IMG/VR virus record: IMGVR_UViG_3300043570_001980 | Span: 186,001-250,000 of that record | DNA length: 64,000 nucleotides | Direction: 5' to 3' (one strand) | Shown here: piece by piece, positions 17,976 to 32,320 of the stretch | Numbering within the stretch: position 1 is the stretch's first letter | Layout: every line of letters starts with the position of its first letter | The notes under the pieces: generated by a model | The model's input: only the letters and a program-made list of their open reading frames with translations | Database searches by the model: none | Told to the model about the DNA's origin: nothing | Position numbers and translations under genes: made by a program

Positions 17976-18275
17976 TTAAAATCCTAGTGCGGCACGTAAG
18001 GTAGTAATTTTAGGAACGTAAATCTTTTTTCCTGCTTCAAAGTCCCAGGGTGGTGCTTGTAGTGTGTTTGGGTTACGTTGATAGAATACCCACCAAAGGC
18101 CGGCGTTTTCATACAAGTCAAAGGCCAGCAAATCTGGTCTGTACTGGTACGTTTGATTTATGCGAAATAGTTTGTCGTCATTTTCTTTTGGCAATGATCT
18201 ATTGACCATCATGTCCAAATAGAATTGCGTATACTTTGTGTTAAAGTACGGACTGGTTGAGTCGTAAACAGCCAT
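17976..18275 (-). CDS. Baseplate wedge protein (gp53/LysM-like)
   Basis: 99 aa with YRPDLLAFDLY..LWWVF..N..G.KIYVP, typical of gp53/tail-X LysM-like proteins. Confidence 0.7.
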   Translation of the reverse strand: MAVYDSTSPYFNTKYTQFYLDMMVNRSLPKENDDKLFRINQTYQYRPDLLAFDLYENAGLWWVFYQRNPNTLQAPPWDFEAGKKIYVPKITTLRAALGF

Positions 18276-19715: not shown

Positions 19716-19743
19716 TTGACAAGCGTTGTAAATATGCTACAAT
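19716..19743 (+). promoter_or_regulatory. Sigma70-type promoter upstream of the late sigma gene
   Basis: TTGACA-16 nt-TACAAT with TG extension; AGGAGG at 19753-19758 before ATG 19770. Confidence 0.7.
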
Positions 19744-19769: not shown

Positions 19770-20675
19770 ATGTCATTATTACCAACACCACCAAAAAAAG
19801 TCAATTATCTCAACAACAGAGATATTTTGAAAGAAATTCATTTGAGTAAGAATACATATTGTTCGTTTTTAGATCCTGTAAACGATCATCAATATGATAT
19901 TATCTTGCCCAGCGTTAGCAAAATTAATCAAAAAACCATTGTCGACGCAAGACGCAATCGTGCTGACCGTATTAAACGTGAAACTGGCGTGGTCATTGAT
20001 CAAAAGAAAATCCCCAATACCGATCTTGTATTCAGAATCACCTGTTGGGAACACATACCAATGGCTCCTAAAAAGATTCCAAAAAGCCAGCAAAAAAAGC
20101 GCAAGCTTGAAGATATTTTAGATTTAGAAGAAGACGTGGTTGACTCTGTGCTTGATGAAATTGCAGAAGTTATTGAGCCTGTTGGTGACCCAACACACGT
20201 TCGTGTTAATTTTCCACCATTCTGGCATTATCGACTCACAGACCAAAAAGTACCTTACGTTGTGGGTCGAAGTCACTGGAAGGGAGATTTCGAAACTGGA
20301 GAATACAGTCGAGATCACGGTACTATGACTCGTAAGCTGGCCACAATGTTTATGAAGTTATGTGAAAGATATGCTACAAGGAGCAACTGGCGTGGATACA
20401 CCTACAACGAAGAAATGCGGGGACAAGCCTTGCTACAACTCAGTCAAATCGGATTGCAATTCGACGAATCAAAATCGCAGAACCCTTTTGCGTATTATAC
20501 TGCCGCTATCACTAATAGCTTTACTCGTGTCTTGAATATTGAGAAAAAGATGCAGAACATCCGTGATGATATTTTAGAAATTAACGGACTCAATCCATCC
20601 TGGACTCGACAAAATTCTGGCAAGGCTGGCATGGCTGCATTATCCGGACCGGTTGTATCTAGCTTGGATGAGTAG
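19770..20675 (+). CDS. gp55: Late-transcription sigma factor (T4 gp55-like)
   Basis: VNYLNNRDIL..; KLCERYATRSNWRGYTYNEEMRGQALLQL..FDESKSQNPFAYYTAAITNSFTRVLNIEKK resembles gp55; sits just upstream of gp47/gp46 as in T4-like phages. Confidence 0.8.
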   Translation: MSLLPTPPKKVNYLNNRDILKEIHLSKNTYCSFLDPVNDHQYDIILPSVSKINQKTIVDARRNRADRIKRETGVVIDQKKIPNTDLVFRITCWEHIPMAPKKIPKSQQKKRKLEDILDLEEDVVDSVLDEIAEVIEPVGDPTHVRVNFPPFWHYRLTDQKVPYVVGRSHWKGDFETGEYSRDHGTMTRKLATMFMKLCERYATRSNWRGYTYNEEMRGQALLQLSQIGLQFDESKSQNPFAYYTAAITNSFTRVLNIEKKMQNIRDDILEINGLNPSWTRQNSGKAGMAALSGPVVSSLDE

Positions 20676-20681
20676 TATAAT
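20653..20681 (+). promoter_or_regulatory. Sigma70-like promoter 6 nt before the gp47 start codon
   Basis: TTGTAT-17 nt-TATAAT, then CAATAG-ATG; no obvious SD. Confidence 0.5.
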
Positions 20682-20687
20682 CAATAG

Positions 20688-21704
20688 ATGACTAATCTAT
20701 TTCGTAAAACGGCTATTTGTACTGACATTCATTTTGGACTAAAGTCAAATAGCCTGGCACACAACCAAGACTGTGAAAATTTTATTGACTGGTTTATTGC
20801 CAAGGCCAAAGAGCAGGGCTGTGAAACTGGCATGTTCCTTGGCGACTGGCATCATCATAGAGCCAGCATTAATCTACAGACCTTGAACTTTAGTCTGCGA
20901 GCGTTGGAAAAACTGTCTAAAGCATTTGATCAGTTTTATTTTATTCCTGGCAATCACGACCTGTACTACAGAGACAAGCGTGATATTCACGGTGCCGAAT
21001 GGGCCAAACATCTACCCAACATACAGATTGTCAACGATTGGTTCAAGCAAGGCGATGTAGTTATTGCTCCCTGGTTGGTGGGAGACGATCACAAGCGCAT
21101 TTCAAAACTGTCAGCTAAATATGTTTTCGGACATTTTGAATTACCACATTTTAAAATGAATGCCATGGTAGAGATGCCGGATCATGGCGAACTACAAGCA
21201 GAGCACTTTACAGGTGTTGAAGAAGTGTATAGCGGTCACTTTCACCTAAGACAAAAAAGACAAAACATCAATTACATTGGCAATTGTTTCCCACATAATT
21301 TTGCCGATGCTGGAGACGACAAACGTGGATGTGCTATTTTAGAATGGGGGAAACCTGTAGAATATCACGCATGGCAGGACCAACCAAGATACCGTGTTCA
21401 CAAACTCAGCGAACTGCTAGATGAAAATAACAAATTGCTCGGCGACAACATGCATGTTCGAATTCAACTTGATATTGATATCAGCTACGAAGAAGCCAAC
21501 TTCATCAAAGAAACGTTCATGCAAAAACATGCCATTAGAGAAATTGGCCTAATTACAGTTAAAAATCAAGATTTAACTTTGGATTTAGCACCAGGTGAAA
21601 TTAAATTTGAAAGTGTTGATCAAATTGTCACACAACAGATCACAGACATTGAATCAGAATTTTACGATTCAAAATTACTGTTGAACATTTACCAGAGTCT
21701 ATAA
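20688..21704 (+). CDS. gp47: Recombination endonuclease subunit (gp47/SbcD/Mre11 metallophosphoesterase)
   Basis: TDIHFG, LGDWHH, PGNHD, FGHFE and SGHFH metallophosphoesterase motifs. Confidence 0.92.
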   Translation: MTNLFRKTAICTDIHFGLKSNSLAHNQDCENFIDWFIAKAKEQGCETGMFLGDWHHHRASINLQTLNFSLRALEKLSKAFDQFYFIPGNHDLYYRDKRDIHGAEWAKHLPNIQIVNDWFKQGDVVIAPWLVGDDHKRISKLSAKYVFGHFELPHFKMNAMVEMPDHGELQAEHFTGVEEVYSGHFHLRQKRQNINYIGNCFPHNFADAGDDKRGCAILEWGKPVEYHAWQDQPRYRVHKLSELLDENNKLLGDNMHVRIQLDIDISYEEANFIKETFMQKHAIREIGLITVKNQDLTLDLAPGEIKFESVDQIVTQQITDIESEFYDSKLLLNIYQSL

Positions 21705-23155
21705 TGAAAGAAGTAATCACAAGAGATTTTATCAATCAACGTATTCGTTTTGTTGAATGTCTAAACAAAGATAAAGTCTACAATATTAAAGAGTTCAACG
21801 ACACAATTAACTATTGGAAAATTATTTTGTACGAAGGGTACAATCTAAGGCCAGGTAACAGAATTTGCATTTATGATTCCACCATTGGATTTTTATATAC
21901 CAGTTTGTTTTTTGCGGCAGCCGAGCTTGGTCTTGAAATCATTACTCCTCCCGAAAAAGCCACAGACGAGTCTGGATATGTAGAACATTTGGAAATCATG
22001 ACTCAAGAACAGGGTCTGTTTGATGCTGCCATCATTGATGAGATTAACCAAAAAAGTTCTAATGTATCGGCCATGGCACAACGATATTGTAAATCTATTA
22101 TCTCTGACCAGGCTTTCTTTTCTTATAAGATCAAAGATGATCAATTATACAAATATCTAGTAGATAACGTTCTTTGTACAGAAGATTCTATTCTGGTACA
22201 TGCAACTACCAGTGGTAGCACTGGGATTCCCAAACCATTGAAATACACACACAAACAACTGCACAGAATTGCTGTGAGAAATATTGATGTTCTTGGTTAT
22301 AAAAATAATTCTGTGTGTCACACAAGAAATCTGCATCATTCATTTATATTAATGACCCACTTCTTGCCGTCAATACACGCATCTGAAGAGCATTATAGTT
22401 TTCCGTTAGGTCGTTGGGAAAATATTAAAGAATTCATTGAGCTGATTAAACAATTAGAAATTTCCAAAGTAGCAATAACTTATAAAGGACTAATCGACAA
22501 TGTATTTTCTATTATGACCAAGTCTGGAGATCAGTTTAAGCATAATATTTCAATTATCGTCGGCGGGTTTCATGTCAGCAACGAATTTATTAAACTAGTA
22601 AAACAAGTAAACATTCAGGAGATTCTTAGTTTATTTGGAACCAATGAAACATTTGGTCCGTTGTTTGTCAAGCATATTAAACAGAGCCAGGATCTTTCCA
22701 CATATCGTCCCGATTGGTATCCACCAACAGATGGAGATTTTTTTACAATCACCGGTGTAGAAAATAAAATTTCTGTTACTGCGGATTCAATTGGTATTAA
22801 AGATATAGTTGTTGAGGATACACTGATCGGAGATAACATCGCAGGATACATACACAAGGGTCGAGAAAATTTATTTAGGATTAACGAAATATATTTTACA
22901 ATTCCCGAAATACACGAAACTGTTGTTCCGTATTGTGATGGAGATTTTGATATTTGTGTGGATGCATCAAATCAAAAATTATATCTTGCTGTCTGGAGTG
23001 GCGCAGTTGAATTTGAAAAATTAAATTTAGCAATGAAAGAAAAATTTAAATTGTTACAATTTGACAAGTATTCCAGACTAGATCGAGACAACTATAGCGG
23101 GTTCAAGGTCAACATGAATTTGTTAAGAAACTTTTTTAACACAATAAAAGAATAA
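21704..23155 (+). CDS. Adenylate-forming (ANL superfamily, acyl-CoA synthetase-like) enzyme
   Basis: P-loop TTSGSTGIPK, FGTNET (A5-like), D..KGREN (A7/A8-like) and terminal SGFKVN (A10-like Lys); AT-rich; inserted between gp47 and gp46. Confidence 0.7.
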   Translation: MKEVITRDFINQRIRFVECLNKDKVYNIKEFNDTINYWKIILYEGYNLRPGNRICIYDSTIGFLYTSLFFAAAELGLEIITPPEKATDESGYVEHLEIMTQEQGLFDAAIIDEINQKSSNVSAMAQRYCKSIISDQAFFSYKIKDDQLYKYLVDNVLCTEDSILVHATTSGSTGIPKPLKYTHKQLHRIAVRNIDVLGYKNNSVCHTRNLHHSFILMTHFLPSIHASEEHYSFPLGRWENIKEFIELIKQLEISKVAITYKGLIDNVFSIMTKSGDQFKHNISIIVGGFHVSNEFIKLVKQVNIQEILSLFGTNETFGPLFVKHIKQSQDLSTYRPDWYPPTDGDFFTITGVENKISVTADSIGIKDIVVEDTLIGDNIAGYIHKGRENLFRINEIYFTIPEIHETVVPYCDGDFDICVDASNQKLYLAVWSGAVEFEKLNLAMKEKFKLLQFDKYSRLDRDNYSGFKVNMNLLRNFFNTIKE

Positions 23156-23209
23156 TGCAGTCAACCGTTATGGTTGGCCTTTTCTCTTAAAATACTGTAC
23201 AATACAACT

Positions 23210-24973
23210 GTGATTAATATTAAAACTCTGACTGTTAAAAACTTTATGAGCGTGGGTAATTCTACTCAAGCCGTTGATTTTGATCGTAAAGATCTTACAC
23301 TTGTGCTAGGTGAGAATCTTGACCTTGGTGGAGATGGCAGTCGGAACGGTACCGGTAAAACTACTATTATCAATGCTCTTAGCTATTCATTATACGGGCA
23401 GGCATTGACCAATATTCGCAAAGACAATCTTGTTAACAAGACCAATGGCAAAAACATGTTGGTCAGTTTAGATTTTGAAGTGAGTGGGAAAAATTATCGA
23501 ATTGAGCGTGGTCGAAAACCCAACGTGTTGAAGTTTTATGTCAACAGTCAAGAACAAGAAATCACCGACGATAGCCAAGGAGACAGCAGAGAAACACAGG
23601 ATGCTATTGAACACATACTTGGTATGAGTCACGATATGTTTAGACATATTCTAGCACTTAACACTTATACTGAACCTTTTTTAAGTCTCAAAGCCAACGA
23701 TCAGCGAACTTTGATCGAACAGTTGTTGGGAATAACGTTGCTGAGTGAAAAGGCTGAACGTATTAAAGAATTAAACAGAGAAACCAAGGACTCTATCAGC
23801 CAGGAAGAGTTTAGAATACGTGCAGTTCAAGAAGCAAACAAACGGATTGAAGAACAAATTGACAGTTTAAAGCGTAGACAAACATTATGGATTACCAAGC
23901 GAGCTGAAGAAATTACCAAACTACAGACAGCGTTAGAAGCATTACAAGAGATTGATATTGATGCAGAAATTACTGCACACCGTGAACATACTGCTTGGGA
24001 TAATAGAAGAAAAGCATTCAACGACTTGCAAACTAAACTAAGTCGAGCAAAGCTAGAAGTTCAACGTGAAGAAAAAACAATTAAAAAATTGTCTGATGAG
24101 ATTGTTTCATTAGAAGCACATACCTGTCACACTTGCGGACAGGCATTTCATGATGAGAAACACGAGCAAGTGTTGACTAATAAACGCACTGACTTAGCTG
24201 ATGCAAGAACACGATGCACCGAGCAAACTACCGAAGTCAGTGAAATTCAAAACGAGTTAGATGATATCGGCGCAGTCGGCAAACCTCCAGTGATGTTCTA
24301 TGACAACGAAGAAGATGCTATTCATCATCGTGCTACATTGGCCAACCTACAAACACAGATTGATAGCAAGCAACAAGAACAAGATCCGTATGCTGAACAA
24401 ATTAGCGACATGCAAGAACAAGCATTGCAGGTGGTTGACTATGTTGGATTAAATGATCTAACCAGAATGCAAGAACATCAAGACTTCTTGTTGAAGTTAT
24501 TGACTTCAAAAGATAGTTTTATTCGCAAAAAGATTATTGAGCAAAATTTAAGTTATTTAAATGCTCGACTAACGCACTATCTAGATAAAATTGGGTTGCC
24601 GCATCAGGTTGTATTTCAAAATGATCTCAGTGTTGAAATTACCGAACTGGGCCGTGACTTAGACTTTGATAACTTATCGCGTGGTGAACGCAATAGACTT
24701 ATACTGTCAATGTCCTGGGCATTCCGTGATGTTTGGGAAAGCTTATATCATCCAATCAATGTGTTGTTCATTGACGAACTTGTTGATTCAGGTATGGATA
24801 CCCAGGGTGTTGAAAACAGTCTTGCACTACTTAAAAAGATGAGTAGAGAACGTCATAAAAGTATTTGGTTAGTAAGTCACCGAGATGAACTTGCTGGTCG
24901 TGTAGAAAATATTTTACGTGTTGTAAAAGAAAATGGATTTACATCCTATAACAATGATGTAGAGATGGCCTGA
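23210..24973 (+). CDS. gp46: Recombination ATPase subunit (gp46/SbcC/Rad50)
   Basis: KNFMSVGN, Walker A NGTGKTT, coiled coil with CHTC zinc hook, LSRGE signature, Walker B LFIDE, VSH. Start likely GTG 23210; the track's TTG 23174 overlaps a promoter-like TTGGCC-18-TACAAT. Confidence 0.93.
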   Translation: MINIKTLTVKNFMSVGNSTQAVDFDRKDLTLVLGENLDLGGDGSRNGTGKTTIINALSYSLYGQALTNIRKDNLVNKTNGKNMLVSLDFEVSGKNYRIERGRKPNVLKFYVNSQEQEITDDSQGDSRETQDAIEHILGMSHDMFRHILALNTYTEPFLSLKANDQRTLIEQLLGITLLSEKAERIKELNRETKDSISQEEFRIRAVQEANKRIEEQIDSLKRRQTLWITKRAEEITKLQTALEALQEIDIDAEITAHREHTAWDNRRKAFNDLQTKLSRAKLEVQREEKTIKKLSDEIVSLEAHTCHTCGQAFHDEKHEQVLTNKRTDLADARTRCTEQTTEVSEIQNELDDIGAVGKPPVMFYDNEEDAIHHRATLANLQTQIDSKQQEQDPYAEQISDMQEQALQVVDYVGLNDLTRMQEHQDFLLKLLTSKDSFIRKKIIEQNLSYLNARLTHYLDKIGLPHQVVFQNDLSVEITELGRDLDFDNLSRGERNRLILSMSWAFRDVWESLYHPINVLFIDELVDSGMDTQGVENSLALLKKMSRERHKSIWLVSHRDELAGRVENILRVVKENGFTSYNNDVEMA

Positions 24974-25512
24974 TGCTTGAGTTTGAGTTAGAAATAGCAT
25001 CATCACAAGGTCGCACACCAGGATACCTACGGGTAGATGACCAAAAGACACACCTGTCAGATCCATTGATACATGCTAAATTTATTATTCAAGACCTAGG
25101 ACAATTAAAACTTGTGTTTGGCGGCAAGACAGAAAACGATACGGTAATAGACAGTAATGGTAATATTGTTGCTGATACAGAATTTAGAATCCTTAATATT
25201 AGATGCAATCAAATCAAACTAGAACCCTGGATACTAACTGATTTTGTTTATTACCCTGATTACTTTAGCGGGTATCTACAACAGTTTCCAGACTCTCCGA
25301 TAACTATTACTAGCCCATATCAATATAATTTTCCCGGAACAATAGAATTTAATTGGGTTTCTAATTTTTGGGATTGGTATTTTGAAGAAAAAAATAAACG
25401 AGAAGTCATTGGTTTCTTAGAAAAAGATCCTGATCGTGTTTGGAAGTTTCGTGGCAGTTTAGATCCCTGTGAGGATCTAGTAGAAAAAATAAAAGAACTA
25501 ATACAGCTATGA
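24973..25512 (+). CDS. Hypothetical protein coupled to the radical SAM gene
   Basis: 179 aa ORF overlapping the gp46 stop and the radical SAM start (ATGA). Confidence 0.7.
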   Translation: MLEFELEIASSQGRTPGYLRVDDQKTHLSDPLIHAKFIIQDLGQLKLVFGGKTENDTVIDSNGNIVADTEFRILNIRCNQIKLEPWILTDFVYYPDYFSGYLQQFPDSPITITSPYQYNFPGTIEFNWVSNFWDWYFEEKNKREVIGFLEKDPDRVWKFRGSLDPCEDLVEKIKELIQL

Positions 25513-27086
25513 AACGATTTGCATTTATCAACGTACCAAGTCAAGAGTTAGAAAGACCACCAGCCGCCGCCGCGGCCATAAGTGCTTGTGTACGTAGTGC
25601 TGGTTGGGAATGTAACGTGTATGATTTTAATTTGTTTTTACACAGCAATGTAACTACAGATGTGTGGGTTGAACTTGAACAATACTGGCGTTGCAAAAAA
25701 TATACACTAGAACCCGAAACTCAACAAATATTAAATGACACCATTGATCAATTTTTAACAACTGTAGCTGAGTTTGAGCCTGACATGGTTGGGATTTCTG
25801 TGTTTACTAGATTCAGTGTTATCCCTGCCAGTGTGATGTTGCAGAAGGTACGAGATCAATTAAACTGTAAAATTGTCATAGGCGGAGCAGGTAGCTATGC
25901 TTGGCCAGGAAGTTTGCCAAATTTAACCAAGAACCCGCTGGCATTAGATGCCACAACGTTTGCTGACTATGCACTAAAGACCGGATTAGTTGATTACTAC
26001 ATCCAAGGAGAAGGTGAACAGGCCATCATTGAATTATTAAATGGCAATGATAACTCCAACGGAGTTAACGGAAACCCAGCAGTTCAAATTCGTAAATTAG
26101 ACAAGCTGCCGCATCCTGAATACGAAGGCATTGACCCATCAAATTACTATTACACATCTGAGCCGGGAATTTATATCACTGCATCAAGAGGCTGTGTTAG
26201 GAATTGCAAATTTTGTAGTATTTCAGACATGTGGCCAAAGTATACTTCTCGTAGTGCCGATGATATTGTAAAAGAAATTATCAACGGAAAGAAAAAATAC
26301 AATGTCAACCTATTTCACTTTACCGACAGTTTAATCAACGGTAATATGAAAATGTGGAGAGAAGTAAATCAGCAATTAGTACAAGCTAAAAAACAAGACG
26401 TCAGTTTAGAACCAATAAAATATCTTGGTCAGTTTATTTGTAGAACAAGATTTGATCAAACTGAAAAAGACTGGGAGTTAATGGCCAAGGCTGGTTGTAA
26501 TATGCTGGTCACTGGATTTGAATCTTACAGTCCTCATGTTAGAAAACACATGGGTAAAAATCACACCAATGCAGATATTGATTTCCATTTTGCACAGTCA
26601 GCATATTACGGAATTAAGAATGTTTGTTTAATGTTTGTTGGATACCCTGTTGAAACATTGGAAGACCATAATTATAATATTGAATTTTTACACCGGTATC
26701 AAAAATATGCTCGAGCAGGAGTGATTCACATGGTACGTTGGGGGTACACTGGTATGTTCCGTGAAGAAGGCAAGCTAGCTGGTGATTCAAAAGTAAAACT
26801 AATTACTGATCCAGACTTTGCCAAACGTTTTCATAACCTACCACAAGGGCTTCGTGACATTGCACTGGGCTTTGGATGGGTAAATGAATTAAACCCAACA
26901 CTCACACTAAAAGAACGCATCCGTCGTCGACTAGAGTTACACGAAGTAAGTGTAAAACTAGGATGGCCACAGACTCGTAACAGAGAAGAGTTACAAATTT
27001 TATATAACATTTTACAAAACCTTGACAAGAATGTCATCAACACTCAGGATTTTGAAAACTTAGAAACCTTATTAGATTTTCATTAA
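25509..27086 (+). CDS. Cobalamin-binding (class B-like) radical SAM enzyme
   Basis: N-terminal B12-binding-like region (PDMVGISVF..IVIGG..GEGE) and SRGCVRNCKFC CxxxCxxC; FTDSLING, GFES and FVGYPVET motifs. Confidence 0.88.
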   Translation: MKRFAFINVPSQELERPPAAAAAISACVRSAGWECNVYDFNLFLHSNVTTDVWVELEQYWRCKKYTLEPETQQILNDTIDQFLTTVAEFEPDMVGISVFTRFSVIPASVMLQKVRDQLNCKIVIGGAGSYAWPGSLPNLTKNPLALDATTFADYALKTGLVDYYIQGEGEQAIIELLNGNDNSNGVNGNPAVQIRKLDKLPHPEYEGIDPSNYYYTSEPGIYITASRGCVRNCKFCSISDMWPKYTSRSADDIVKEIINGKKKYNVNLFHFTDSLINGNMKMWREVNQQLVQAKKQDVSLEPIKYLGQFICRTRFDQTEKDWELMAKAGCNMLVTGFESYSPHVRKHMGKNHTNADIDFHFAQSAYYGIKNVCLMFVGYPVETLEDHNYNIEFLHRYQKYARAGVIHMVRWGYTGMFREEGKLAGDSKVKLITDPDFAKRFHNLPQGLRDIALGFGWVNELNPTLTLKERIRRRLELHEVSVKLGWPQTRNREELQILYNILQNLDKNVINTQDFENLETLLDFH

Positions 27087-27148
27087 ATTTTTACACTTAG
27101 ATCAACGGAGATGATAACTATACAGCAAGGATAAATCACACACAACAT

Positions 27149-27577
27149 ATGACATGGCTATTTCAAGACACCCCAGTTGAGACATTGCCCGAAGAGTGTG
27201 TTGGATTTGTTTACTTGATTACAAATAATCTCACTGGTCGCAAGTACATAGGCAAAAAACTCGCAAAATTTTCAAAAACCACATACAAAACAGTAACACA
27301 AAAAAACGGCATAAAAAAGCGGAAGAAGATACGCTCGAAGATTGATTCAGATTGGAGAGAGTACTACGGGTCAAGCCCAGAATTAACCGCAGACGTAATC
27401 AAACTAGGCACCGAAAACTTCACCAGAGAAATACTTTATTATTGCAACTCCAAATCAGAATGCAGTTACATTGAAGCAAGAGAACAATTTTCAAGACGAG
27501 TATTAGAATCGCAAGATTATTACAACGGCCATATACAAGTTAGAGTACACGGTAGTCATATTAGAGGAAAACTATGA
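27149..27577 (+). CDS. Small GIY-YIG-family nuclease
   Basis: GFVYLITNNLTGRKYIGKK..YYGSS..FTREIL..E..YYN. Confidence 0.8.
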   Translation: MTWLFQDTPVETLPEECVGFVYLITNNLTGRKYIGKKLAKFSKTTYKTVTQKNGIKKRKKIRSKIDSDWREYYGSSPELTADVIKLGTENFTREILYYCNSKSECSYIEAREQFSRRVLESQDYYNGHIQVRVHGSHIRGKL

Positions 27578-28380
27578 GTGAAATTTTTTTACAAAAGTTT
27601 TATGACAATGTCAAAGATTTGTCTTGGCCTCAACTTATTGAAACCTACAGTGACTTTGTAAAATTGCCCGATAGTATCAAAAACGAATGTTATCAACAGC
27701 ATGGACTAGAATCAACACTGAATCAAATTGAAGATTCCGATTACTGGCTTGCCAGTCATCGGTCCAGGGTAGTGGTGTACCGACATCATTCTTTGGTGTT
27801 TATACCTGTGCCAAAATGCGGATTTATTTACTATCATGATTTGTTTACTCGTATAGGGTGGGAACAAATTACCCTGGACAAAGTAAATTTTGATCAGCAC
27901 ATTGTTTTTACTGCTATCATGAATCCAACGGATCGATATCTCAAAGGCTTAACTGAGTGGTTCTGGAAAAGAATTAGATTTGATAATTTTGACAATTTAG
28001 AACAGCAAGAACTATTTTTTAACATAGCATCTGACATACTGATTACTGATATACACACAATGCCATACACCGTCGAATATCAAGGTATTATCAATAAGAT
28101 ACATTGGATTCCGTCTGACAACTTGTCTGACAACGAAGTAAAACAATCAATGATGCATTTGTTTAAAAAACACAATTACAATATACAGCTACCACTTGAC
28201 GACCCCCGATTACATCAATCCAACCCAAAAAAACTAAAGCTTTACCAGGCATTAAAAAATGTACACATCCGTAAAAAACAAAAAACTTTTGAATTGTTGT
28301 ACGTTTTTTTAGCAGAAGATTTAAAATTTTACCGGCAGCTAGTTAATAAATTTGACCCAACTTGGTCTAAAAACATTTAA
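27574..28380 (+). CDS. Sulfotransferase-fold-like protein with an N-terminal KxxxWP mini-domain
   Basis: VFIPVPKCG (5'-PSB-like), MNPTDRYLKG (3'-PB-like RxPxxR), D.HT.P and terminal EDLKFY resemble Sulfotransfer_2-type proteins; motifs are degenerate. Confidence 0.5.
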   Translation: MSEIFLQKFYDNVKDLSWPQLIETYSDFVKLPDSIKNECYQQHGLESTLNQIEDSDYWLASHRSRVVVYRHHSLVFIPVPKCGFIYYHDLFTRIGWEQITLDKVNFDQHIVFTAIMNPTDRYLKGLTEWFWKRIRFDNFDNLEQQELFFNIASDILITDIHTMPYTVEYQGIINKIHWIPSDNLSDNEVKQSMMHLFKKHNYNIQLPLDDPRLHQSNPKKLKLYQALKNVHIRKKQKTFELLYVFLAEDLKFYRQLVNKFDPTWSKNI

Positions 28381-28394
28381 TTTTAAGCAGTTAC

Positions 28395-28826
28395 GACTCG
28401 CACAGGTCAATTTCGTGTGCCCTAGACCTGGATCTCGGATCACAGGGACGGAAGTCTTGCCGCTCTAGCAAGCACTCAATCACTACCCGAAAGGATGACG
28501 ATCGCTAATTGCCGCGGTTTGATTGTTTGAAAAGAATTTAAAGGCTAAAAAGACGCAGAAGTGATTCTGCAGGTTAATATAGTATGTTAGCGTATATTAT
28601 ATTGATTGCCGTTGTATAAAGACGCAACTCGAGGTACCGGACAACCGCCTCTGTAATGTTGTAACGCTATGTGGCTATTCGAACTCGGATAATGCTTTTA
28701 ATCTTTGCCCTGTGCGGGCAAAGTGTGACCAAAGAATCTGGATAATAACTGTAATCTCACTTCGCTCGATGTTTATAATAATATTGATGAGCGATAGCGA
28801 AATCAATAGAACTTCAACGAAGTTCT
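28395..28826 (+). ncRNA. Candidate structured non-coding RNA (or replication-origin/ssi-like structured DNA)
   Basis: ORF-free gap with at least 9 hairpins, including GCAGAA-GTGA-TTCTGC and CC-GAAA-GG (GNRA loops), CTTTGCCC-TGTGC-GGGCAAAG, CCTGGATC-TCG-GATCACAGG, a G.U-containing AATATAGTATGT/GTATATTATATT stem, and GAACTTC-AAC-GAAGTTC. Confidence 0.5.
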
Positions 28827-28836
28827 CATAAAGCCG

Positions 28837-29172
28837 TTATAAGTTAGTATCTGGCCAATCTCTAAACAATGCATGTTGAATATCACCAGCAACAAACTGA
28901 TTGAATGACTTGTGTTTCTCTTCGAGTTCTCCTTTGAGTGGTGCTACTCGTTTGAACGCATTGTCCATCTGACCCATGTCTCTAAACTCCATGAGTATCA
29001 TCCACTCTGGCATGTCGGCAATACTACGGAATCCCATTTTACATCTTGTGATTCTGTACGATACCATCTTGTCTTCGGAGATCAAATGATCAAAGAAACT
29101 TTTCATTCCGTTGACCCAGTCTAAGTCTGAGATATCGCCTTCTTTGTTTGCCCAAATTGTGTATAAGTCCAT
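28837..29172 (-). CDS. Small conserved protein (DUF6614-like, possible dimeric alpha/beta barrel)
   Basis: 111 aa; YRITRCKMGFRS..PEWMILMEF..QMDNAF..H..F..ALFRDWPD; last gene of the amidinotransferase operon. Confidence 0.55.
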   Translation of the reverse strand: MDLYTIWANKEGDISDLDWVNGMKSFFDHLISEDKMVSYRITRCKMGFRSIADMPEWMILMEFRDMGQMDNAFKRVAPLKGELEEKHKSFNQFVAGDIQHALFRDWPDTNL

Positions 29173-29173
29173 T

Positions 29174-30145
29174 TTATATTTCCTCTCTGTGAAGATCGCT
29201 GGTTACACAATGCAGACCATTGTCCCAAAAACACTTGTGTCTAAACTGTGAAACATGCGGAGTAACTTGATGCCGTTTGAGTGCATCAAATATTTGTTGA
29301 TTGTAGCCACTGATCACTACATTTTTATTGTCGATGATCAACATGTTTAATTCAAAAACAGTTTCTGCTACATAACCCAACAAATTCTTAAAGTAACAAT
29401 CAATAAACTCTGTGAGTTTATTATTACTTTCTTGCCCTGGCAACCACCAAGATCCTGTGTGTGTTGCTTGCCAATTCTTAAATGATGGTAATTTTTCTAG
29501 ACTGGGTTTGATATAAACTATTTCCCAATCATAGAAATACATTTTAAAAAATAGTTTTAGTAGTTGGTGATTTGCAGGATCGTCTATGGCTATAATCAAT
29601 CCTGGTGTAACAGGACAAAACCATCCATCAATATGCCCAGTCTGATGAAAAGCTGTTAATTTTTTATTGCTGGCTCTATTTTGTAAAAATTCATGAGCTG
29701 ATTTATTATTAGAATAAAATACACAGTCGAGAAATTGATAAACAGTGGCACCACACACTGATGGTAGATTAATTTCTATTTCTTGATTACCCTGAGCAAT
29801 CACATGATCAGAAATGTTTTTATAAAAATCCGGATCTATGTTATTGTAAAATGATTTAACAAGTTTATTTCCTAGCATTAACAAATGATCCCTGGCTGCC
29901 AACGGCGCCTTTGGTAGATTGTCAACATCAACATCAACAACACCTGCTGTTGGCCTAAGCGTGTGTACTCCAAGAGCATTCAGATTAACTGCTAGTGTAT
30001 GTAGGTCTTCTTCGGTTTCACTGGCAATTGTTTCAAAATGATTTCGAATCTCAACGTTGTTGATCCAACTATAAAACTCAGGACTCCAACTGCGGCCAAC
30101 CACACAGGTTTTTAGTCTATGCCATTCGCTGTTAATCTGATACAT
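29174..30145 (-). CDS. Amidinotransferase-family protein (copy 2)
   Basis: SEWHRLKTCVVG, ARDHL, GHIDGWF, FELNML and C-terminal DNGLHCVTSDL (His and Cys catalytic motifs of the AGAT/StrB1 family). Confidence 0.85.
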   Translation of the reverse strand: MYQINSEWHRLKTCVVGRSWSPEFYSWINNVEIRNHFETIASETEEDLHTLAVNLNALGVHTLRPTAGVVDVDVDNLPKAPLAARDHLLMLGNKLVKSFYNNIDPDFYKNISDHVIAQGNQEIEINLPSVCGATVYQFLDCVFYSNNKSAHEFLQNRASNKKLTAFHQTGHIDGWFCPVTPGLIIAIDDPANHQLLKLFFKMYFYDWEIVYIKPSLEKLPSFKNWQATHTGSWWLPGQESNNKLTEFIDCYFKNLLGYVAETVFELNMLIIDNKNVVISGYNQQIFDALKRHQVTPHVSQFRHKCFWDNGLHCVTSDLHREEI

Positions 30146-30588
30146 TACACCAACGGACCTAATATCTCAAAGCCATCAATATCTTGTTTGTATAAATGTG
30201 CTTGCTCTAAGTATAAAAATTTAAAACCACGCTGTTTATAGATAGCACATTCTGTTTTCATTGTTTCAATGCCTAGTCGCATTTTGGGTCGATGATAGGT
30301 CCAAGCAAATTGGTCGCATTGTGCGTTATACTGGTCAAATCTACGTATCAGGCTAAATGCAACCAGTTCAGCGTTGTCGTAGTAGCCAATGATGTCAGCC
30401 ATTGGATCTTGATAGCGACTGTGAAATATAGGCATTACTGATGAAAAATGTTTGTAGGTACAGTAGTACTTGTATATTTCATCTAGCTTGTTGAGTGTGG
30501 TTTCATCACGATCAGTGATGTAATTCCAACCAACAGTGGGTAGGTAATTGGTTTTATCTAGGTCAATTCTGGCAAATTGATAAGTCAT
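30145..30588 (-). CDS. Arginyl-tRNA-protein transferase (ATE/Bpt) C-terminal-like GNAT-fold protein
   Basis: GYYDNAELVAFSLI..FAWTY..RLGIETMKTECAIYKQRGFKFLYL..YK resembles the ATE_C pattern (LG..S...EI..A...G..YLYLG..YK). Confidence 0.55.
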   Translation of the reverse strand: MTYQFARIDLDKTNYLPTVGWNYITDRDETTLNKLDEIYKYYCTYKHFSSVMPIFHSRYQDPMADIIGYYDNAELVAFSLIRRFDQYNAQCDQFAWTYHRPKMRLGIETMKTECAIYKQRGFKFLYLEQAHLYKQDIDGFEILGPLV

Positions 30589-31814
30589 GTTCTATCCGGA
30601 AAAAAATCTTGCTGGATACCTTTTCGGTCCAGGTCCAAGGTAACACAATGTACACCACCGTCCCAGAAGTATCTGTGTCGCAAAGGGCAAATGTGAGGAG
30701 TTATGTTGTGACGTTTAAAAGCATCAAATGCTTTTTCATTGTAGCTGTTGACAATGACATTTTGTTGATTGATCACAAGGATATTTACATCAAACACACT
30801 TTCCTCAACATACCCTACCCAATCTTGCAACCATGTTTCTACATATTCAATCAGTTCGTCATCGTATTCACTACCCTTGATCCACCAACGCCCTTGATTT
30901 TTTTCTTTAAGGTCCAAAAATGATTTCACTTTGTTCCAGCCTTCTCCGCTCAGGTATACAACTTCCCATCCAGGAAATGTATCTGCATAGGTAGGCATAT
31001 CTTCTATGCTCACAATAAGACCAGGCTTAACAGGAGTAAAACAACCGTCGATATGTCCACCAGTGGTCACAATATGATTTCTAAAGTCTGGAAAAAAATG
31101 TTCAGTTAGTTTTTTGATTTTGTCGATATCGGCAGATTCAGATATCCCAAAAAATAAATCTTTTCCGATACGGGTGATTCCATTAGTTGGAATTTGATTT
31201 AACATGTCATGATATTGATTTTCAATGATAGGATTACCAGCTGACTTCACAAGACCAGTAACCGGTTCCCACCAGTCGAACTCACTAGCCTTGGATATAA
31301 TTTCATCAGAATTGTCACCAGGTTTAAACTCAAACTGAAACAAGTTTTTACATTCTTCTTGGATCCAAACTGGCAGCTGATCAAATGGAGTAAATTCTTG
31401 TGGCCAATCAGGACCTTTAAAGTTGTTGTAATTTTTTTTAGTCCAATTACCAGGAGGCATGATACTTCGTCCTGATGATTTTATGCTGATGTTGTCGTAA
31501 GGAAACACAAAAAAGTCTGATCCAATCATAATCATCTGATCTCTTGGAATCATGCTAACAGGGCCAGGTATGCGACGATTTTGTGTCAGTAACCGATCTA
31601 GTTGTACTGTGGGTACATTTGGTCTTACAGTCTTTACATTGAACTTTTCAAGTAATGTCACAAGATTCACAAAGTCTTCTTCAGTTTCAGTAGCAATACG
31701 TTCAAACAAACTGCGTAATCGTGGATTTTTTATAAAGCTATAAAACTCAGGAGGATAACTTTTACCCACAACACAAACTTGCAATGGATCCCACGGTTGA
31801 TGTACACTATACAT
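30585..31814 (-). CDS. Amidinotransferase-family protein (copy 1) with an internal KxxxWP insertion
   Basis: WDPLQVCVVG, PRDQ, TRIGKD, GHIDGCF, FDVNIL and DGGVHCVTLDL motifs. Confidence 0.88.
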   Translation of the reverse strand: MYSVHQPWDPLQVCVVGKSYPPEFYSFIKNPRLRSLFERIATETEEDFVNLVTLLEKFNVKTVRPNVPTVQLDRLLTQNRRIPGPVSMIPRDQMIMIGSDFFVFPYDNISIKSSGRSIMPPGNWTKKNYNNFKGPDWPQEFTPFDQLPVWIQEECKNLFQFEFKPGDNSDEIISKASEFDWWEPVTGLVKSAGNPIIENQYHDMLNQIPTNGITRIGKDLFFGISESADIDKIKKLTEHFFPDFRNHIVTTGGHIDGCFTPVKPGLIVSIEDMPTYADTFPGWEVVYLSGEGWNKVKSFLDLKEKNQGRWWIKGSEYDDELIEYVETWLQDWVGYVEESVFDVNILVINQQNVIVNSYNEKAFDAFKRHNITPHICPLRHRYFWDGGVHCVTLDLDRKGIQQDFFPDRT

Positions 31815-32320
31815 TATGTTTTCCTTGGATCCTGTCTGTGGTGAAACAGGGCTTGTAGATATTCTTCAGGCCAAGAGTGATAAAATCCTTTGTCAGCCAT
31901 TTGCTTGGCTTTGGTGTTTAAATCACTTAGACTTTGTACCAATGCTAATGCATACGTGCCTTGATTCATGCACACACCATTGATCATTTCAACATCATCT
32001 GGGTGATCTTCTAGTGCCAACATGTCTCTAGGTAACAGTACTTCCTTGTTAACCAATTCAATACTACCAGCAAGCATATCGTGTGACCATTCTGTTGGAT
32101 CGTACACATAGATAATAACTTCTCGGTTGCCCATGCCTTGACGCCCACAATTTTTAAGATCGTAGTAGGGATCGGCTCCAAGATAAACTGCATAGCTGTT
32201 CTTTACTCGTGCTGACCGTGCATAAGGACAAGGAGAAAATCCCCCTAATGCAGGATGTGGAACTTCTAAGAAGTTTGTAATCCACAGTTCTATATCTTGT
32301 TTGACTTGTTCTAGTTCCAT
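31814..32320 (-). CDS. Hypothetical protein (DUF1415-like CPYAR motif)
   Basis: 168 aa; WI..F..PCPYAR..DHP..LVQ..L..GFYHSW; translationally coupled on both sides. Confidence 0.55.
   Translation of the reverse strand: MELEQVKQDIELWITNFLEVPHPALGGFSPCPYARSARVKNSYAVYLGADPYYDLKNCGRQGMGNREVIIYVYDPTEWSHDMLAGSIELVNKEVLLPRDMLALEDHPDDVEMINGVCMNQGTYALALVQSLSDLNTKAKQMADKGFYHSWPEEYLQALFHHRQDPRKT

What the first reader, a model, noticed from the sequence alone, without database searches (positions are those of the whole stretch)
21704..28380. Tailoring enzymes slotted between core recombination genes
Seen: an AT-rich ANL-type adenylating enzyme splits the normally adjacent gp47 and gp46. A 179 aa unknown plus a B12 radical SAM follow gp46, and a sulfotransferase-like gene follows the GIY-YIG gene, mostly with overlapping stop/start codons. 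Inference: together with the amidinotransferase cassette these resemble a dispersed biosynthetic or modification toolkit (acylation, radical methylation, sulfation, amidination) inserted gene by gene into core operons.
Basis: partly seen in the sequence, partly recalled or inferred. Interest (0 to 1): 0.6.

Follow-up and report, generated by a model that had tools for sequence, protein, structure and literature searches.

The report
Enzyme cargo slots in phage recombination operon
In an abundant group of giant lake-water phages, the gaps between core DNA-recombination genes act as slots that different relatives fill with different enzymes; this phage carries three separately acquired, apparently working enzymes there, which do not look like one pathway.

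Summary
On the + strand: gp55, gp47 (Mre11-like), a divergent ANL adenylating enzyme, gp46 (Rad50-like), a 179-aa protein, a B12-type radical SAM enzyme, a 142-aa GIY-YIG protein and a 268-aa protein with a sulfotransferase fold. Four of six junctions overlap. All four enzymes, including the neighbouring amidinotransferase, keep their catalytic motifs.

I surveyed 59 related loci, chosen by the conserved GIY-YIG gene. gp47|gp46, gp46|GIY-YIG and the site after GIY-YIG are cargo slots. Slot A is empty in 31 loci, holds the ANL in 5 and other genes in 23. Slot B holds radical SAM cargo in 22.

The cargo items vary independently:
- The ANL and the B12 enzyme co-occur only in this lineage.
- The ANL allele was swapped by recombination exactly at its gene borders (dS 1.5 against 0.3-0.4 in the flanks).
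- The 179-aa protein is a predicted subunit of the radical SAM enzyme. The pair moves together and occurs fused.
- The 268-aa gene is an 827-bp insertion between GIY-YIG and a conserved Polynucleobacter-1 RNA.
- No carrier protein is present.

Insertion into hotspots is supported; a single coordinated toolkit is not. The phage is nevertheless very rich in tailoring enzymes (14 radical SAM genes, plus a halogenase/ANL/carbamoyltransferase operon).

The parts
19716..19743 (+). Best sigma-70-like promoter match, just upstream of gp55 (TTGACA, 16 nt, TG, TACAAT; 11 of 12)
   Evidence: It is a consensus match only; the total number of such sites in the region is no higher than in shuffles.
19770..20675 (+). 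gp55-like late sigma factor, first gene of the conserved frame
   Evidence: PHROG 12791, 4.8e-76. Present at 56-95% identity in all related loci.
20688..21704 (+). gp47 / SbcD / Mre11-like nuclease subunit (core gene)
   Evidence: Pfam Metallophos 31.2 bits; PHROG 100, 2.5e-57. dN/dS 0.023 against L018.
21704..23155 (+). Slot A cargo: divergent ANL-superfamily adenylate-forming enzyme, 483 aa
   Evidence: Pfam AMP-binding 38.1 bits. AF2 model pLDDT 87.5; Foldseek top hits are ANL enzymes at E about 1e-21 and 12-14% identity. Invariant in 15 homologues: P-loop S170/G171/T173/P176, E315, G386-R387, K468; D372 in 90% or more. GC 33.7%. DNA identity to L018 drops from 0.93 to 0.65 exactly at the start codon. 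dS 1.54, dN/dS 0.14.
23174..24973 (+). gp46 / SbcC / Rad50-like ATPase subunit (core gene)
   Evidence: PHROG 77, 9.6e-103; Pfam AAA_23 and SMC_N. Nearest cultured relatives are PA5oct-like Pseudomonas jumbo phages at 51%.
24973..25512 (+). Slot B cargo, part 1: 179-aa accessory subunit of the radical SAM enzyme (family without annotation)
   Evidence: No Pfam, PHROG, NCBIfam or PDB match. A homologue lies directly upstream of the B12 radical SAM gene in L010, L012, L046 and the marine contig L044. 578 cluster representatives, including natural fusions to B12 radical SAM enzymes, P0276 and P0299. Complex prediction ipSAE 0.73 against best control 0.00.
25509..27086 (+). Slot B cargo, part 2: class-B (cobalamin-type) radical SAM enzyme, 525 aa
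   Evidence: Radical_SAM 70.4 bits, B12-binding 28.8 bits. All NCBIfam families far below cut-off; best is the RiPP C-methyltransferase family TIGR03975, 77.8 against 281.85. C229/C233/C236 invariant in 13 homologues. dN/dS 0.044. No match in 50,697 phage records, but 1478 metagenomic homologues.
27149..27577 (+). Conserved 142-aa GIY-YIG protein: a fixed core gene of the clade, not a mobile homing endonuclease
   Evidence: SegE_GIY-YIG 114.8 bits. 83% mean column identity over 11 divergent loci. At least 592 IMG/VR contigs carry it. Homologues in Kyanoviridae cyanophages and Methylophilales phage Melnitz.
27574..28380 (+). Slot C cargo: 268-aa protein with an N-terminal helical motif domain (1-65) and a sulfotransferase-fold domain (71-261)
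   Evidence: Atlas score 0.95 to viral Sulfotransfer_2 clusters. AF2 pLDDT 89. VIA-align top 18 rows all sulfotransferases, best Z 8.5. Invariant K81-C82 in 'PVPKCG', R121, D159, H161. Absent from L018: an 827-bp indel, window 27552-28379.
28395..28528 (+). Polynucleobacter-1 RNA motif (RF01718), the conserved 3' neighbour of the GIY-YIG gene
   Evidence: 120 bits, E 3.7e-26, full length. Directly after GIY-YIG in L018, L041, L036, L006, L031, L073, L046 and L027.
28837..29172 (-). DUF6614 protein, a conserved member of the convergent minus-strand cassette
   Evidence: Pfam DUF6614 74.8 bits. Present in L025, L026, L031, L034, L041 and L046.
29174..30145 (-). 323-aa accessory gene, weakly amidinotransferase-like, inserted between DUF6614 and the 147-aa gene
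   Evidence: phmmer to StrB1 (1bwd), 3.7e-4. Absent from L025, L026, L031, L034 and L041, where its neighbours are contiguous. GC 35.9%.
30145..30588 (-). Conserved 147-aa gene of the minus-strand cassette (unknown function)
   Evidence: 59-100% identity in related loci.
30585..31814 (-). 409-aa AGAT-family amidinotransferase-like enzyme, inserted between the 147-aa and 168-aa genes
   Evidence: phmmer to HsvA 2.7e-10, AGAT 3.4e-10, SxtG 6.6e-8. HID and GGVHC motifs aligned to the catalytic His and Cys regions. Absent from most relatives. Carries the ~35-aa motif also found in the 268-aa protein.
31814..32320 (-). Conserved 168-aa gene of the minus-strand cassette (unknown function)
   Evidence: 58-96% identity in related loci.

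Best explanation
Window 19.7-32.3 kb is the conserved frame of a very abundant clade of freshwater jumbo T4-like phages: gp55, gp47, [slot A], gp46, [slot B], GIY-YIG, [slot C], Polynucleobacter-1 RNA, then a convergent minus-strand cassette. The junctions between these core genes are cargo slots. Recombination between related phages in the same lakes, using the conserved core genes as homology arms, swaps, adds or removes accessory genes there.

Shown: this phage holds three unrelated modules, acquired separately. Each is under purifying selection and keeps its catalytic motifs.
- Slot A: a highly divergent ANL adenylate-forming enzyme.
- Slot B: a cobalamin-type radical SAM enzyme with a 179-aa partner protein.
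- Slot C: a sulfotransferase-fold enzyme, inserted between GIY-YIG and the RNA.
Two amidinotransferase-like genes were inserted in the same way into the neighbouring cassette.

Inferred mechanisms:
- The ANL activates a carboxylic acid as an acyl-AMP. With no carrier protein encoded, it passes the acyl group to CoA or to an amine.
- In several deeply diverged relatives the ANL sits next to a secreted TctC-type carboxylate-binding protein. This suggests the substrate is an imported organic acid.
- The 179-aa protein binds the C-terminal region of the radical SAM enzyme as a subunit. The pair most likely methylates an unactivated carbon of an unknown substrate.
- The 268-aa enzyme transfers sulfate from PAPS.
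- The modules work independently, as exchangeable accessory enzymes co-transcribed with the recombination genes. They are not steps of one pathway.
For: Hotspots. In 59 loci chosen only by the GIY-YIG gene, slot A is empty in 31, holds the ANL in 5, and holds other cargo in 23 (N-terminal-twitch radical SAM, a 267-aa family, unknowns). Slot B is empty in 25, holds radical SAM-type cargo in 22 and unknowns in 12. About 30 loci have diverse slot C genes (families named).

Fixed frame. The same order of core genes is found at 56-99% identity in all loci.

Exchange of the ANL. Against L018 the ANL has dS 1.54 and 70% amino-acid identity. gp47 has dS 0.43 and 99%; gp46 has dS 0.31 and 98%. ANL dN/dS is 0.14. 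DNA identity drops exactly at the ANL start codon. Against L019 the ANL is 52% identical while the flanks are 95-97%.

Independent distribution.
- ANL without the B12 enzyme: L003, L006, L026, L027, L031, L034, L036, L041.
- B12 enzyme without ANL: L010, L012, L046.
- 268-aa-like gene without either: L108, L109.

Intact enzymes.

Subunit claim.
- The 179-aa gene and the radical SAM gene are adjacent even in an unrelated marine phage context.
- Natural fusions exist.
- ipSAE is 0.73 against a best control of 0.00. That mark was reached by 58 of 80 solved complexes and 2 of 110 mismatched pairs. The runs agree in at least 89% of contacts and the partner's pLDDT is at least 84.

No carrier protein.

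TctC genes with signal peptides lie next to the ANL in L001/L017/L018, L019, L025, L031-33 and L117, in both orders.

Co-existing relatives share the GIY-YIG gene but differ on both sides of it in the same lake samples.
Against: - No substrate is known for any of the enzymes. All chemistry beyond the enzyme class is inferred.
- The TctC link is weak for this phage. Its own TctC genes lie elsewhere in the genome, and an ANL-free relative also has one.
- The loci are not phylogenetically independent, and several are the same phage from different samples. The counts describe loci, not events.
- The 268-aa protein fails every sequence model of sulfotransferases, and Z 8.5 is in the range that unrelated folds can reach (note).
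- The motif shared by the 268-aa protein and the amidinotransferase could mean that some of the cargo shares a target. So could the genome-wide excess of tailoring enzymes.
- The ANL always sits right after gp47 and is usually translationally coupled to it. This is not explained by chance insertion alone.
Confidence: 0.6

Rival explanations
1. One dispersed pathway. The ANL, the radical SAM pair, the sulfotransferase-like enzyme and the amidinotransferases act in sequence or on one common target. The target could be a hypermodified DNA base, a virion or cell-surface glycan, or a peptide or small-molecule product. They are scattered only because insertion sites are limited.
For: - All are tailoring-type enzymes with intact motifs, packed within 11 kb.
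- A ~35-residue motif (FYxxVKDPxWP...LPxxIxxEC) occurs at the N-terminus of the 268-aa protein and inside the 409-aa amidinotransferase. It also occurs in other enzymes of these phages.
- The same phage carries 14 radical SAM genes.
- It also has an operon of two tryptophan halogenases, a canonical ANL, a carbamoyltransferase and several radical SAM enzymes.
- The genes are co-transcribed with DNA-metabolism genes.
Against: - The genes show no co-occurrence across 59 + 28 related loci.
- The closest relative (95-99% identical flanks) lacks the 268-aa gene and has a 70%-identical ANL allele plus an extra TctC gene.
- No carrier protein and no ThyA-type hydroxymethylase are present in near-complete genomes.
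- The 'APS kinase' hit is only a generic P-loop N-terminus.
Confidence: 0.15
2. Counter-defence cargo. The slots hold arms-race genes, and the ANL in particular is an anti-defence enzyme. It might inactivate or mimic a host immune signal or cofactor, with alleles kept diverse by selection from host defences.
For: - The ANL allele is far more diverged than its flanks, was replaced as a cassette, and is still under purifying selection.
- Slot contents turn over rapidly among co-existing relatives.
- Expression is probably early, from a host-type promoter.
- None of these families is present in cultured phages.
Against: No similarity to any known anti-defence or defence protein was found, and PADLOC was not searched. 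Accessory metabolic genes show similar turnover. The association with a secreted carboxylate-binding protein points to metabolism rather than immunity.
Confidence: 0.15
3. The ANL is a functional partner of the Mre11/Rad50-like gp47/gp46 nuclease, for example modifying one subunit or a DNA-end-bound factor. That would explain why it lies between the two genes.
For: - In 26 of 28 ANL-bearing viral loci with readable context, the ANL lies between gp47 and gp46, down to 23% identity.
- Its start usually overlaps the gp47 stop.
Against: - Only 5 of 59 clade loci have it. 31 have gp47 and gp46 directly adjacent, and 23 have unrelated cargo in the same slot.
- The allele is exchanged independently of gp47 and gp46.
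- A distant homologue sits among tail and neck genes instead.
- No complex prediction was run for this pair.
Confidence: 0.05

Closest known systems
Plastic (hyperplastic) regions of the T4 superfamily: a conserved core with accessory genes between core genes, as in cyanophage and T4-like genomes (from my own knowledge of the literature, not checked here)
   Same: Conserved, syntenic core genes (gp55, gp47, gp46, baseplate, portal). Variable accessory genes lie between them. Cargo is AT-richer, and exchange occurs among relatives.
   Different: - The insertion sites split gp47 from gp46 and gp46 from a fixed GIY-YIG gene.
- The identifiable cargo is dominated by radical SAM enzymes with small partner proteins.
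- The host genomes are about 340-355-kb freshwater jumbo phages with no close cultured relative. Megablast found no match, and the best gp46 hit is 51%.
ANL superfamily (acyl/aryl-CoA synthetases, NRPS adenylation domains, acyl-ACP synthetases, luciferases)
   Same: Two-domain fold. The P-loop, the Glu of the YGxTE-like motif, the GR hinge motif and the C-terminal catalytic Lys are all conserved, and the ribose-binding Asp nearly so.
   Different: - Only 12-14% identical to any solved member. The Pfam match covers only residues 122-325, and no AMP-binding_C match was found.
- A family-specific invariant H206-x-R208-x-x-H211-H212 plus H230 lies where the acyl pocket is expected.
- No carrier protein is encoded.
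- The family is restricted to metagenomic phage contigs.
Class B (cobalamin-dependent) radical SAM methyltransferases, such as the RiPP C-methyltransferase family TIGR03975 and the PhpK P-methyltransferase family TIGR04479
   Same: An N-terminal B12-binding-like domain followed by a radical SAM domain with CxxxCxxC.
   Different: - Scores are far below every curated family cut-off (77.8 against 281.85; 71.9 against 600).
- It always comes with a ~170-200-aa partner protein of an unannotated family, and is sometimes fused to it.
Sulfotransfer_2 (PF03567) and heparan sulfate O-sulfotransferase fold
   Same: The fold of residues 71-261. A PKxG-type loop carries invariant Lys81, and Arg121 and His161 are also invariant.
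   Different: No sequence-profile match at all. There is an extra N-terminal helical domain carrying a motif shared with other phage enzymes.
AGAT-family amidinotransferases (HsvA, glycine amidinotransferase, SxtG, StrB1)
   Same: The 409-aa neighbour matches them at E 1e-8 to 1e-10 and keeps the HID and GGxHC motifs.
   Different: There is no Pfam match in the window. It carries an inserted ~35-aa motif, it is phage-encoded, and its substrate is unknown.
Seg-type GIY-YIG homing endonucleases of T4
   Same: The GIY-YIG domain matches the SegE model at 114.8 bits.
   Different: It is only 142 aa, with no DNA-binding extension. It sits at a fixed position, is 70-96% identical across the clade, and is found in at least 592 contigs. 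It behaves as a core gene, not a mobile one.

Membership tests
ANL superfamily (483-aa protein) | Pfam AMP-binding match above the gathering score | tested here: met
   38.1 bits against 29.9, residues 122-325.
ANL superfamily (483-aa protein) | Two-domain ANL fold | tested here: met
   AF2 pLDDT 87.5. Foldseek top rows are all ANL enzymes: 4r0m, 8i3i and 7thq, E about 1e-21, TM 0.6-0.69.
ANL superfamily (483-aa protein) | Core catalytic motifs: P-loop, Glu, Asp, GR hinge, C-terminal Lys | tested here: met
   S170, G171, T173, P176, E315, G386, R387 and K468 are invariant in 15 sequences at 23-70% identity; D372 is present in 90% or more. Motif assignment is by inspection.
ANL superfamily (483-aa protein) | ATP-dependent adenylation of a carboxylate | not testable with these tools
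   Needs an enzyme assay.
Class B cobalamin-dependent radical SAM (525-aa protein) | Radical SAM domain with a CxxxCxxC cluster motif | tested here: met
   Radical_SAM 70.4 bits. C229, C233 and C236 are invariant in 13 homologues.
Class B cobalamin-dependent radical SAM (525-aa protein) | N-terminal B12-binding domain | tested here: inconclusive
   PF02310 scores 28.8 bits, below the 32.1 cut-off. The fused homologue P0299 reaches 35.2. Cobalamin binding was not tested.
Class B cobalamin-dependent radical SAM (525-aa protein) | Membership of a curated functional subfamily (TIGR03975, PhpK, BchE, HpnR and others) | tested here: not met
   All 22 NCBIfam matches are far below their cut-offs.
Sulfotransferase, Sulfotransfer_2 type (268-aa protein) | Sequence-profile match | tested here: not met
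   No PF03567 hit for the protein, for any of 14 homologues at E up to 1, or in six-frame searches of 5 genomes.
Sulfotransferase, Sulfotransfer_2 type (268-aa protein) | Sulfotransferase fold | tested here: met
   VIA-align top 18 rows are all sulfotransferases, Z 8.5 to 4.8, 140-176 residues aligned. Atlas TM 0.61-0.64 and feature score 0.95. Foldseek alone found nothing below E 0.001.
Sulfotransferase, Sulfotransfer_2 type (268-aa protein) | PAPS-binding Lys loop, Arg, and catalytic His | tested here: inconclusive
   K81, R121 and H161 are invariant. Their equivalence to the PAPS-binding and catalytic residues is by inspection, not by superposition.
One biosynthetic pathway or gene cluster | Member genes co-occur across genomes | tested here: not met
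   Independent presence and absence in 59 + 28 loci.
One biosynthetic pathway or gene cluster | Carrier protein for the adenylating enzyme | tested here: not met
   No PF00550 match in G000 or in five related records, including genomes 95% and 99% complete. The control search found it in 11 of 14 genomes.
Mobile Seg-type homing endonuclease (142-aa GIY-YIG) | Sporadic distribution and variable position | tested here: not met
   Fixed position in all loci, 83% mean column identity, at least 592 contigs.
AGAT-family amidinotransferase (409-aa neighbour) | Sequence similarity and the catalytic Cys and His motifs | tested here: met
   HsvA 2.7e-10, AGAT 3.4e-10. HID and GGVHC are aligned. No Pfam family was found for this protein, and the six-frame PF02274 search matched only outside the window.

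The most novel reading that the evidence does not exclude
These lake jumbo phages may run a large, modular 'tailoring chemistry' system on a common class of target, such as their own DNA, a peptide or a surface polymer. Each genome carries 6-19 radical SAM genes. This phage also has two halogenases, a carbamoyltransferase, two ANL enzymes, amidinotransferases and a sulfotransferase-like enzyme.

In this reading the slots around gp47, gp46 and GIY-YIG are where interchangeable modules are plugged in. The ~180-aa partner proteins and the shared ~35-aa motif would be the adaptors that direct different enzymes to that target. This would be a new kind of combinatorial modification system in viruses.
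Probability: 0.15. Interest if true: 0.85.

Novelty: new variant of a known kind. Interest (0 to 1): 0.55.

Why it matters
- It turns a loose impression into a defined, testable architecture: a fixed operon frame with three cargo slots, in a phage clade seen in at least 592 viral contigs and 20 lake metagenome runs.
- It identifies three enzyme families that no cultured phage carries: a deeply divergent ANL, a two-subunit B12-type radical SAM enzyme, and a cryptic sulfotransferase-fold protein.
- It shows how recombination between co-existing relatives shuffles such genes.
- It flags phages that are very rich in radical SAM enzymes. The chemistry is unknown and may bear on DNA or protein modification, host metabolism or counter-defence.
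- It assigns the orphan Polynucleobacter-1 RNA motif to a phage context.

Tried and rejected
Searches that found nothing:
- Megablast of 19770-28380 against 50,697 phage records: no match.
- tblastn of the ANL and of the radical SAM enzyme against the same collection: no match.
- Pfam, PHROG and NCBIfam on the 179-aa and 268-aa proteins; Pfam on 14 homologues of the 268-aa protein.
- phmmer of the 179-aa and 268-aa proteins against PDB sequences: nothing usable.
- Foldseek of the 268-aa model against the PDB: no row below E 0.001. It was superseded by the exhaustive VIA-align search.
- Two literature searches on radical SAM enzymes in phages found nothing on this clade or these families.

Leads checked and dropped:
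- PF02274 amidinotransferase six-frame search: only a 12.8-bit match outside the window. The cassette was found instead by PDB sequence search.
- DNA hypermodification by the T4 route: no ThyA-type hydroxymethylase in five related genomes. This does not exclude other routes.
- PAPS supply: the APS-kinase hit covers only the N-terminal P-loop of a 264-aa protein that also matches KTI12 and generic AAA models, so it is not evidence.
- Synteny in the nearest cultured carrier of the GIY-YIG gene, Melnitz: not syntenic and uninformative.
- A distant ANL homologue (23%) lies among tail-fibre and neck genes, with no informative partner.
- Expression: none of the listed runs that hold the stretch is an RNA run, so transcription is untested.
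- One contig joint in run X20 skips 24778-27248, which would be an empty slot B. It has only 23 letters on one side, so I do not count it.

Procedure:
- No other genetic code was used.
- Read laying was given 5951 letters.

Full report
**What is in the sequence**

The + strand between 19.7 and 28.4 kb carries eight tightly packed ORFs.
- Family scans name gp55-like late sigma (PHROG 12791, 4.8e-76), gp47/SbcD (2.5e-57) and gp46/SbcC (9.6e-103).
- The 483-aa protein matches Pfam AMP-binding at 38.1 bits.
- The 525-aa protein has Radical_SAM at 70.4 bits and a sub-threshold B12-binding match at 28.8 bits.
- The 142-aa protein matches SegE-type GIY-YIG at 114.8 bits.
- The 179-aa and 268-aa proteins have no family.
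- The accessory genes are AT-richer than the core: ANL 33.7%, 179-aa 35.0% and 268-aa 34.0% GC, against 38-39% for gp46 and gp47 and 40.6% for the genome.
- Four of six junctions share stop and start bases.

The window lies in a 175-kb IMG/VR virus record that CheckV rates 45% complete. An identical copy of the region lies on a 342-kb contig rated 95% complete. So this is a jumbo phage with a T4-like core.
- Megablast against 50,697 phage records finds nothing.
- The nearest gp46 is 51% identical, in PA5oct-like Pseudomonas jumbo phages.
- Twenty lake-water metagenome runs hold 21704-27086 at 96% or more of sampled words.
- Contigs of runs not flagged as the source bridge ANL/gp46, gp46/179/rSAM, GIY/268 and 268/RNA with no differences.

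**The enzymes look active**

ANL enzyme.
- An alignment of 15 ANL homologues at 23-70% identity keeps the P-loop (S170, G171, T173, P176), E315, G386-R387 and K468 invariant, and D372 nearly so.
- The AlphaFold model has pLDDT 87.5. It matches only ANL enzymes: McyG A-PCP, acyl-ACP synthetase and PltF, at E about 1e-21 and 12-14% identity.
- A family-specific invariant HxRxxHH plus H230 lies where I expect the acyl pocket. That placement is my inference.

Radical SAM enzyme. C229, C233 and C236 are invariant. It falls far below every curated NCBIfam family.

The 268-aa protein.
- It has invariant K81-C82 in a 'PVPKCG' loop, plus R121, D159 and H161.
- Its model has pLDDT 89.
- Foldseek gives nothing significant.
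- An exhaustive VIA-align search puts sulfotransferases in all top 18 rows. The best is heparan sulfate 2-O-sulfotransferase: Z 8.5, rmsd 4.1, 172 residues aligned.
- The ESM Atlas gives 0.95 to viral Sulfotransfer_2 clusters.
- No sequence profile of sulfotransferases matches it or its 14 homologues. I call it sulfotransferase-fold, not a family member.

The amidinotransferase cassette. This is the adjacent minus-strand block.
- The 409-aa ORF matches HsvA, AGAT and SxtG at E 1e-8 to 1e-10 and keeps the HID and GGxHC motifs.
- The 323-aa ORF is only weakly similar to StrB1.

**The junctions are cargo slots**

The ANL family has 29 metagenomic members. In every context read, down to 26% identity, it lies between gp47 and gp46, and its start usually overlaps the gp47 stop. 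The same holds for 26 of 28 IMG/VR loci.

That set was chosen through the ANL, so I built a second one from the most conserved gene of the frame, the 142-aa GIY-YIG. At least 592 viral contigs carry it.

| Slot (59 fetched loci holding gp47, gp46 and GIY-YIG) | Empty | ANL | Radical SAM-type cargo | Other or unknown cargo |
|---|---|---|---|---|
| A: gp47 to gp46 | 31 | 5 | counted under 'other' | 23 (N-terminal-twitch radical SAM, a 267-aa family, unknown ~240-aa proteins) |
| B: gp46 to GIY-YIG | 25 | 0 | 22 | 12 (unknowns) |
| C: after GIY-YIG | about 29 | 0 | 0 | about 30 (diverse unknown genes) |

- The families are named.
- In the lake samples, contig depth over the GIY-YIG gene is 3-9 times that of its flanks. 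Many variant contigs match it and then run on into unlike sequence on both sides. Relatives with different slot contents co-exist there, sharing this gene as a homology arm.

**The cargo is exchanged module by module, not as a set**

Against the closest relative (L018), the core genes are 94-99% identical with dS 0.1-0.5 and dN/dS 0.02-0.08.
- The ANL is 70% identical, with dS 1.54, dN 0.21 and dN/dS 0.14.
- DNA identity falls from 0.93 to 0.65 exactly at the ANL start codon.
- It returns to 0.95 at gp46, after a 966-bp TctC gene that only the relative has.
- Against L019 the ANL is 52% identical within flanks of 95-97%.
- The ANL allele is therefore older than its flanks. It was replaced by recombination and is still under purifying selection.

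The 268-aa gene is an 827-bp indel against L018. The only other members in the survey, at 35% identity, sit in slot C of loci that have neither the ANL nor a B12 radical SAM enzyme.

The two amidinotransferase-like genes are missing from L025, L026, L031, L034, L041 and L046, where their conserved neighbours are contiguous.

The ANL occurs without the B12 enzyme in many lineages, and the B12 enzyme occurs without the ANL in L010, L012 and L046. The two co-occur only in this phage's own lineage.

No phosphopantetheine carrier domain is found in the 175-kb record or in five related records, including genomes 95% and 99% complete. No ThyA-type hydroxymethylase is found in those five related records.

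The enzymes are not dead.

**The 179-aa protein belongs to the radical SAM enzyme**

- A homologue at 28-51% identity lies directly upstream of the B12-type radical SAM gene in L010, L012 and L046. It does so too in a marine TARA contig with unrelated neighbours.
- A profile search finds 578 cluster representatives.
- Two of these, P0276 (714 aa) and P0299 (689 aa), are B12/radical SAM enzymes with a C-terminal 179-like domain.
- A complex prediction gives ipSAE 0.73 against a best control of 0.00. That mark was reached by 58 of 80 solved complexes and 2 of 110 mismatched pairs.
- The runs agree in at least 89% of contacts, and the partner's pLDDT is at least 84. My own alignments were used, so the calibration holds only roughly.
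- The interface joins residues 77-82 and 133-177 of the small protein to the C-terminal region of the enzyme.
- Weakly related 147-159-aa proteins accompany other radical SAM cargo.

I read the pair as a two-subunit enzyme. The substrate is unknown. Methylation is inferred from the enzyme class only.

**What the ANL may do**

TctC-type solute-binding proteins with signal peptides lie next to the ANL in at least three deeply diverged lineages. They sit before it in some and after it in others. In the unbiased set, TctC in this operon is seen only beside an ANL.

This suggests that the ANL activates an imported organic acid. With no carrier protein present, the acyl group would go to CoA or to an amine.

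The link is weak for this phage. Its two TctC genes lie elsewhere, and an ANL-free relative also has one.

The fixed position after gp47 might instead mean a tie to the Mre11/Rad50-like nuclease. However, 54 of 59 clade loci lack the ANL, and a distant homologue sits among tail and neck genes.

**Wider context**

- Near-complete relatives carry 6-19 Radical_SAM genes each, and this phage carries 14.
- Upstream of the window, the same record has a minus-strand operon with two tryptophan halogenases (308-310 bits), a canonical ANL with AMP-binding_C, a carbamoyltransferase and several radical SAM/SPASM enzymes.
- A ~35-residue motif at the N-terminus of the 268-aa protein recurs inside the 409-aa amidinotransferase. 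It also recurs in SGNH-like and unknown proteins of related genomes.

These points keep open a broader reading in which many of these enzymes share a kind of target. I give that reading about 0.15.

**Comparison with what is known**

A conserved core with plastic accessory regions is well known in the T4 superfamily (my own knowledge). Several things here are new variants of that theme:
- the particular slots, which split gp47 from gp46;
- the dominance of radical SAM cargo;
- the cassette-like exchange of a divergent ANL;
- the two-subunit B12-type enzyme;
- the sulfotransferase-fold protein that sequence searches miss.

None of these families is found in cultured phages.

**Verdict**

The region is a hotspot-bearing core operon with independently acquired, active accessory enzymes (confidence 0.6). 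Interest is moderate, at 0.55.

Noticed in passing
window 28395-28528 (+); also L018 16851-16986, L041 14270-14405, L036 16159-16292, L006 13721-13861, L031 13759-13903, L073 10454-10599, L046 11577-11714, L027 5085-5220: A full-length Polynucleobacter-1 RNA motif (RF01718, 69-120 bits against a gathering score of 37) lies directly 3' of the conserved GIY-YIG gene in 9 of the 16 sources searched (the window and 15 loci). The motif was described in 2010 from Burkholderiales and freshwater or estuary metagenomes (PMC2864571). It appears to be an element of this phage clade, and it hints at Polynucleobacter-like hosts.
   Followed up: partly
G000:C1:2751-16958 (-) = L137, upstream of the window: A minus-strand operon holds two flavin-dependent tryptophan halogenases (PF04820, 308-310 bits), a canonical ANL (AMP-binding 200 bits plus AMP-binding_C), a carbamoyltransferase and at least four radical SAM/SPASM enzymes. 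It looks like a natural-product-type tailoring cluster inside a phage genome.
   Followed up: partly
Whole genomes G001 (same phage, 342 kb), G002, G003, G006, G007: Each genome has 6 to 19 Radical_SAM (PF04055) matches at E up to 0.001, and this phage has 14. Five sit side by side at G001:166471-173091. This is an unusually high load for a virus.
   Followed up: partly
window 27574-27770 (N-terminus of the 268-aa protein) and about 31329-31439 (-) inside the 409-aa amidinotransferase; L129-L133, L134, L136: A ~35-residue motif (FYxxVKDPxWP...LPxxIxxEC...H) recurs at different positions in otherwise unrelated enzymes of these phages. These include sulfotransferase-fold, amidinotransferase-like, weakly SGNH/GDSL-like and unknown proteins. 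No Pfam family covers it.
   Followed up: partly
window 27149-27577: The 142-aa GIY-YIG protein is among the most conserved genes of the clade (83% mean column identity). It has homologues in Kyanoviridae cyanophages, where it is widely annotated 'NAD synthetase', which looks like a propagated misannotation. Its role as a fixed core nuclease is unknown.
   Followed up: partly
L001 11458-12411, L025 11452-12390, L031 9045-9989; G001:138676 and G001:61534: The phages encode TctC/Bug-type periplasmic solute-binding proteins with signal peptides, 1-3 per genome in four of the five genomes searched. A marine relative's contig also carries TctA. This suggests that the phage boosts uptake of organic acids.
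   Followed up: partly
window 18275-19657 (-): The 460-aa gene next to the baseplate block is the second most diverged gene against close relatives (79% amino-acid identity, dN/dS 0.33, while its neighbours are 96-98%). It also varies in length between loci. It may be a host-recognition component.
   Followed up: no
window 23160-23178 (+): A stem-loop followed by a T-rich tail lies in the 18-nt gap between the ANL and gp46 and overlaps the gp46 TTG start. It could be a cassette boundary or a translational control element.
   Followed up: no
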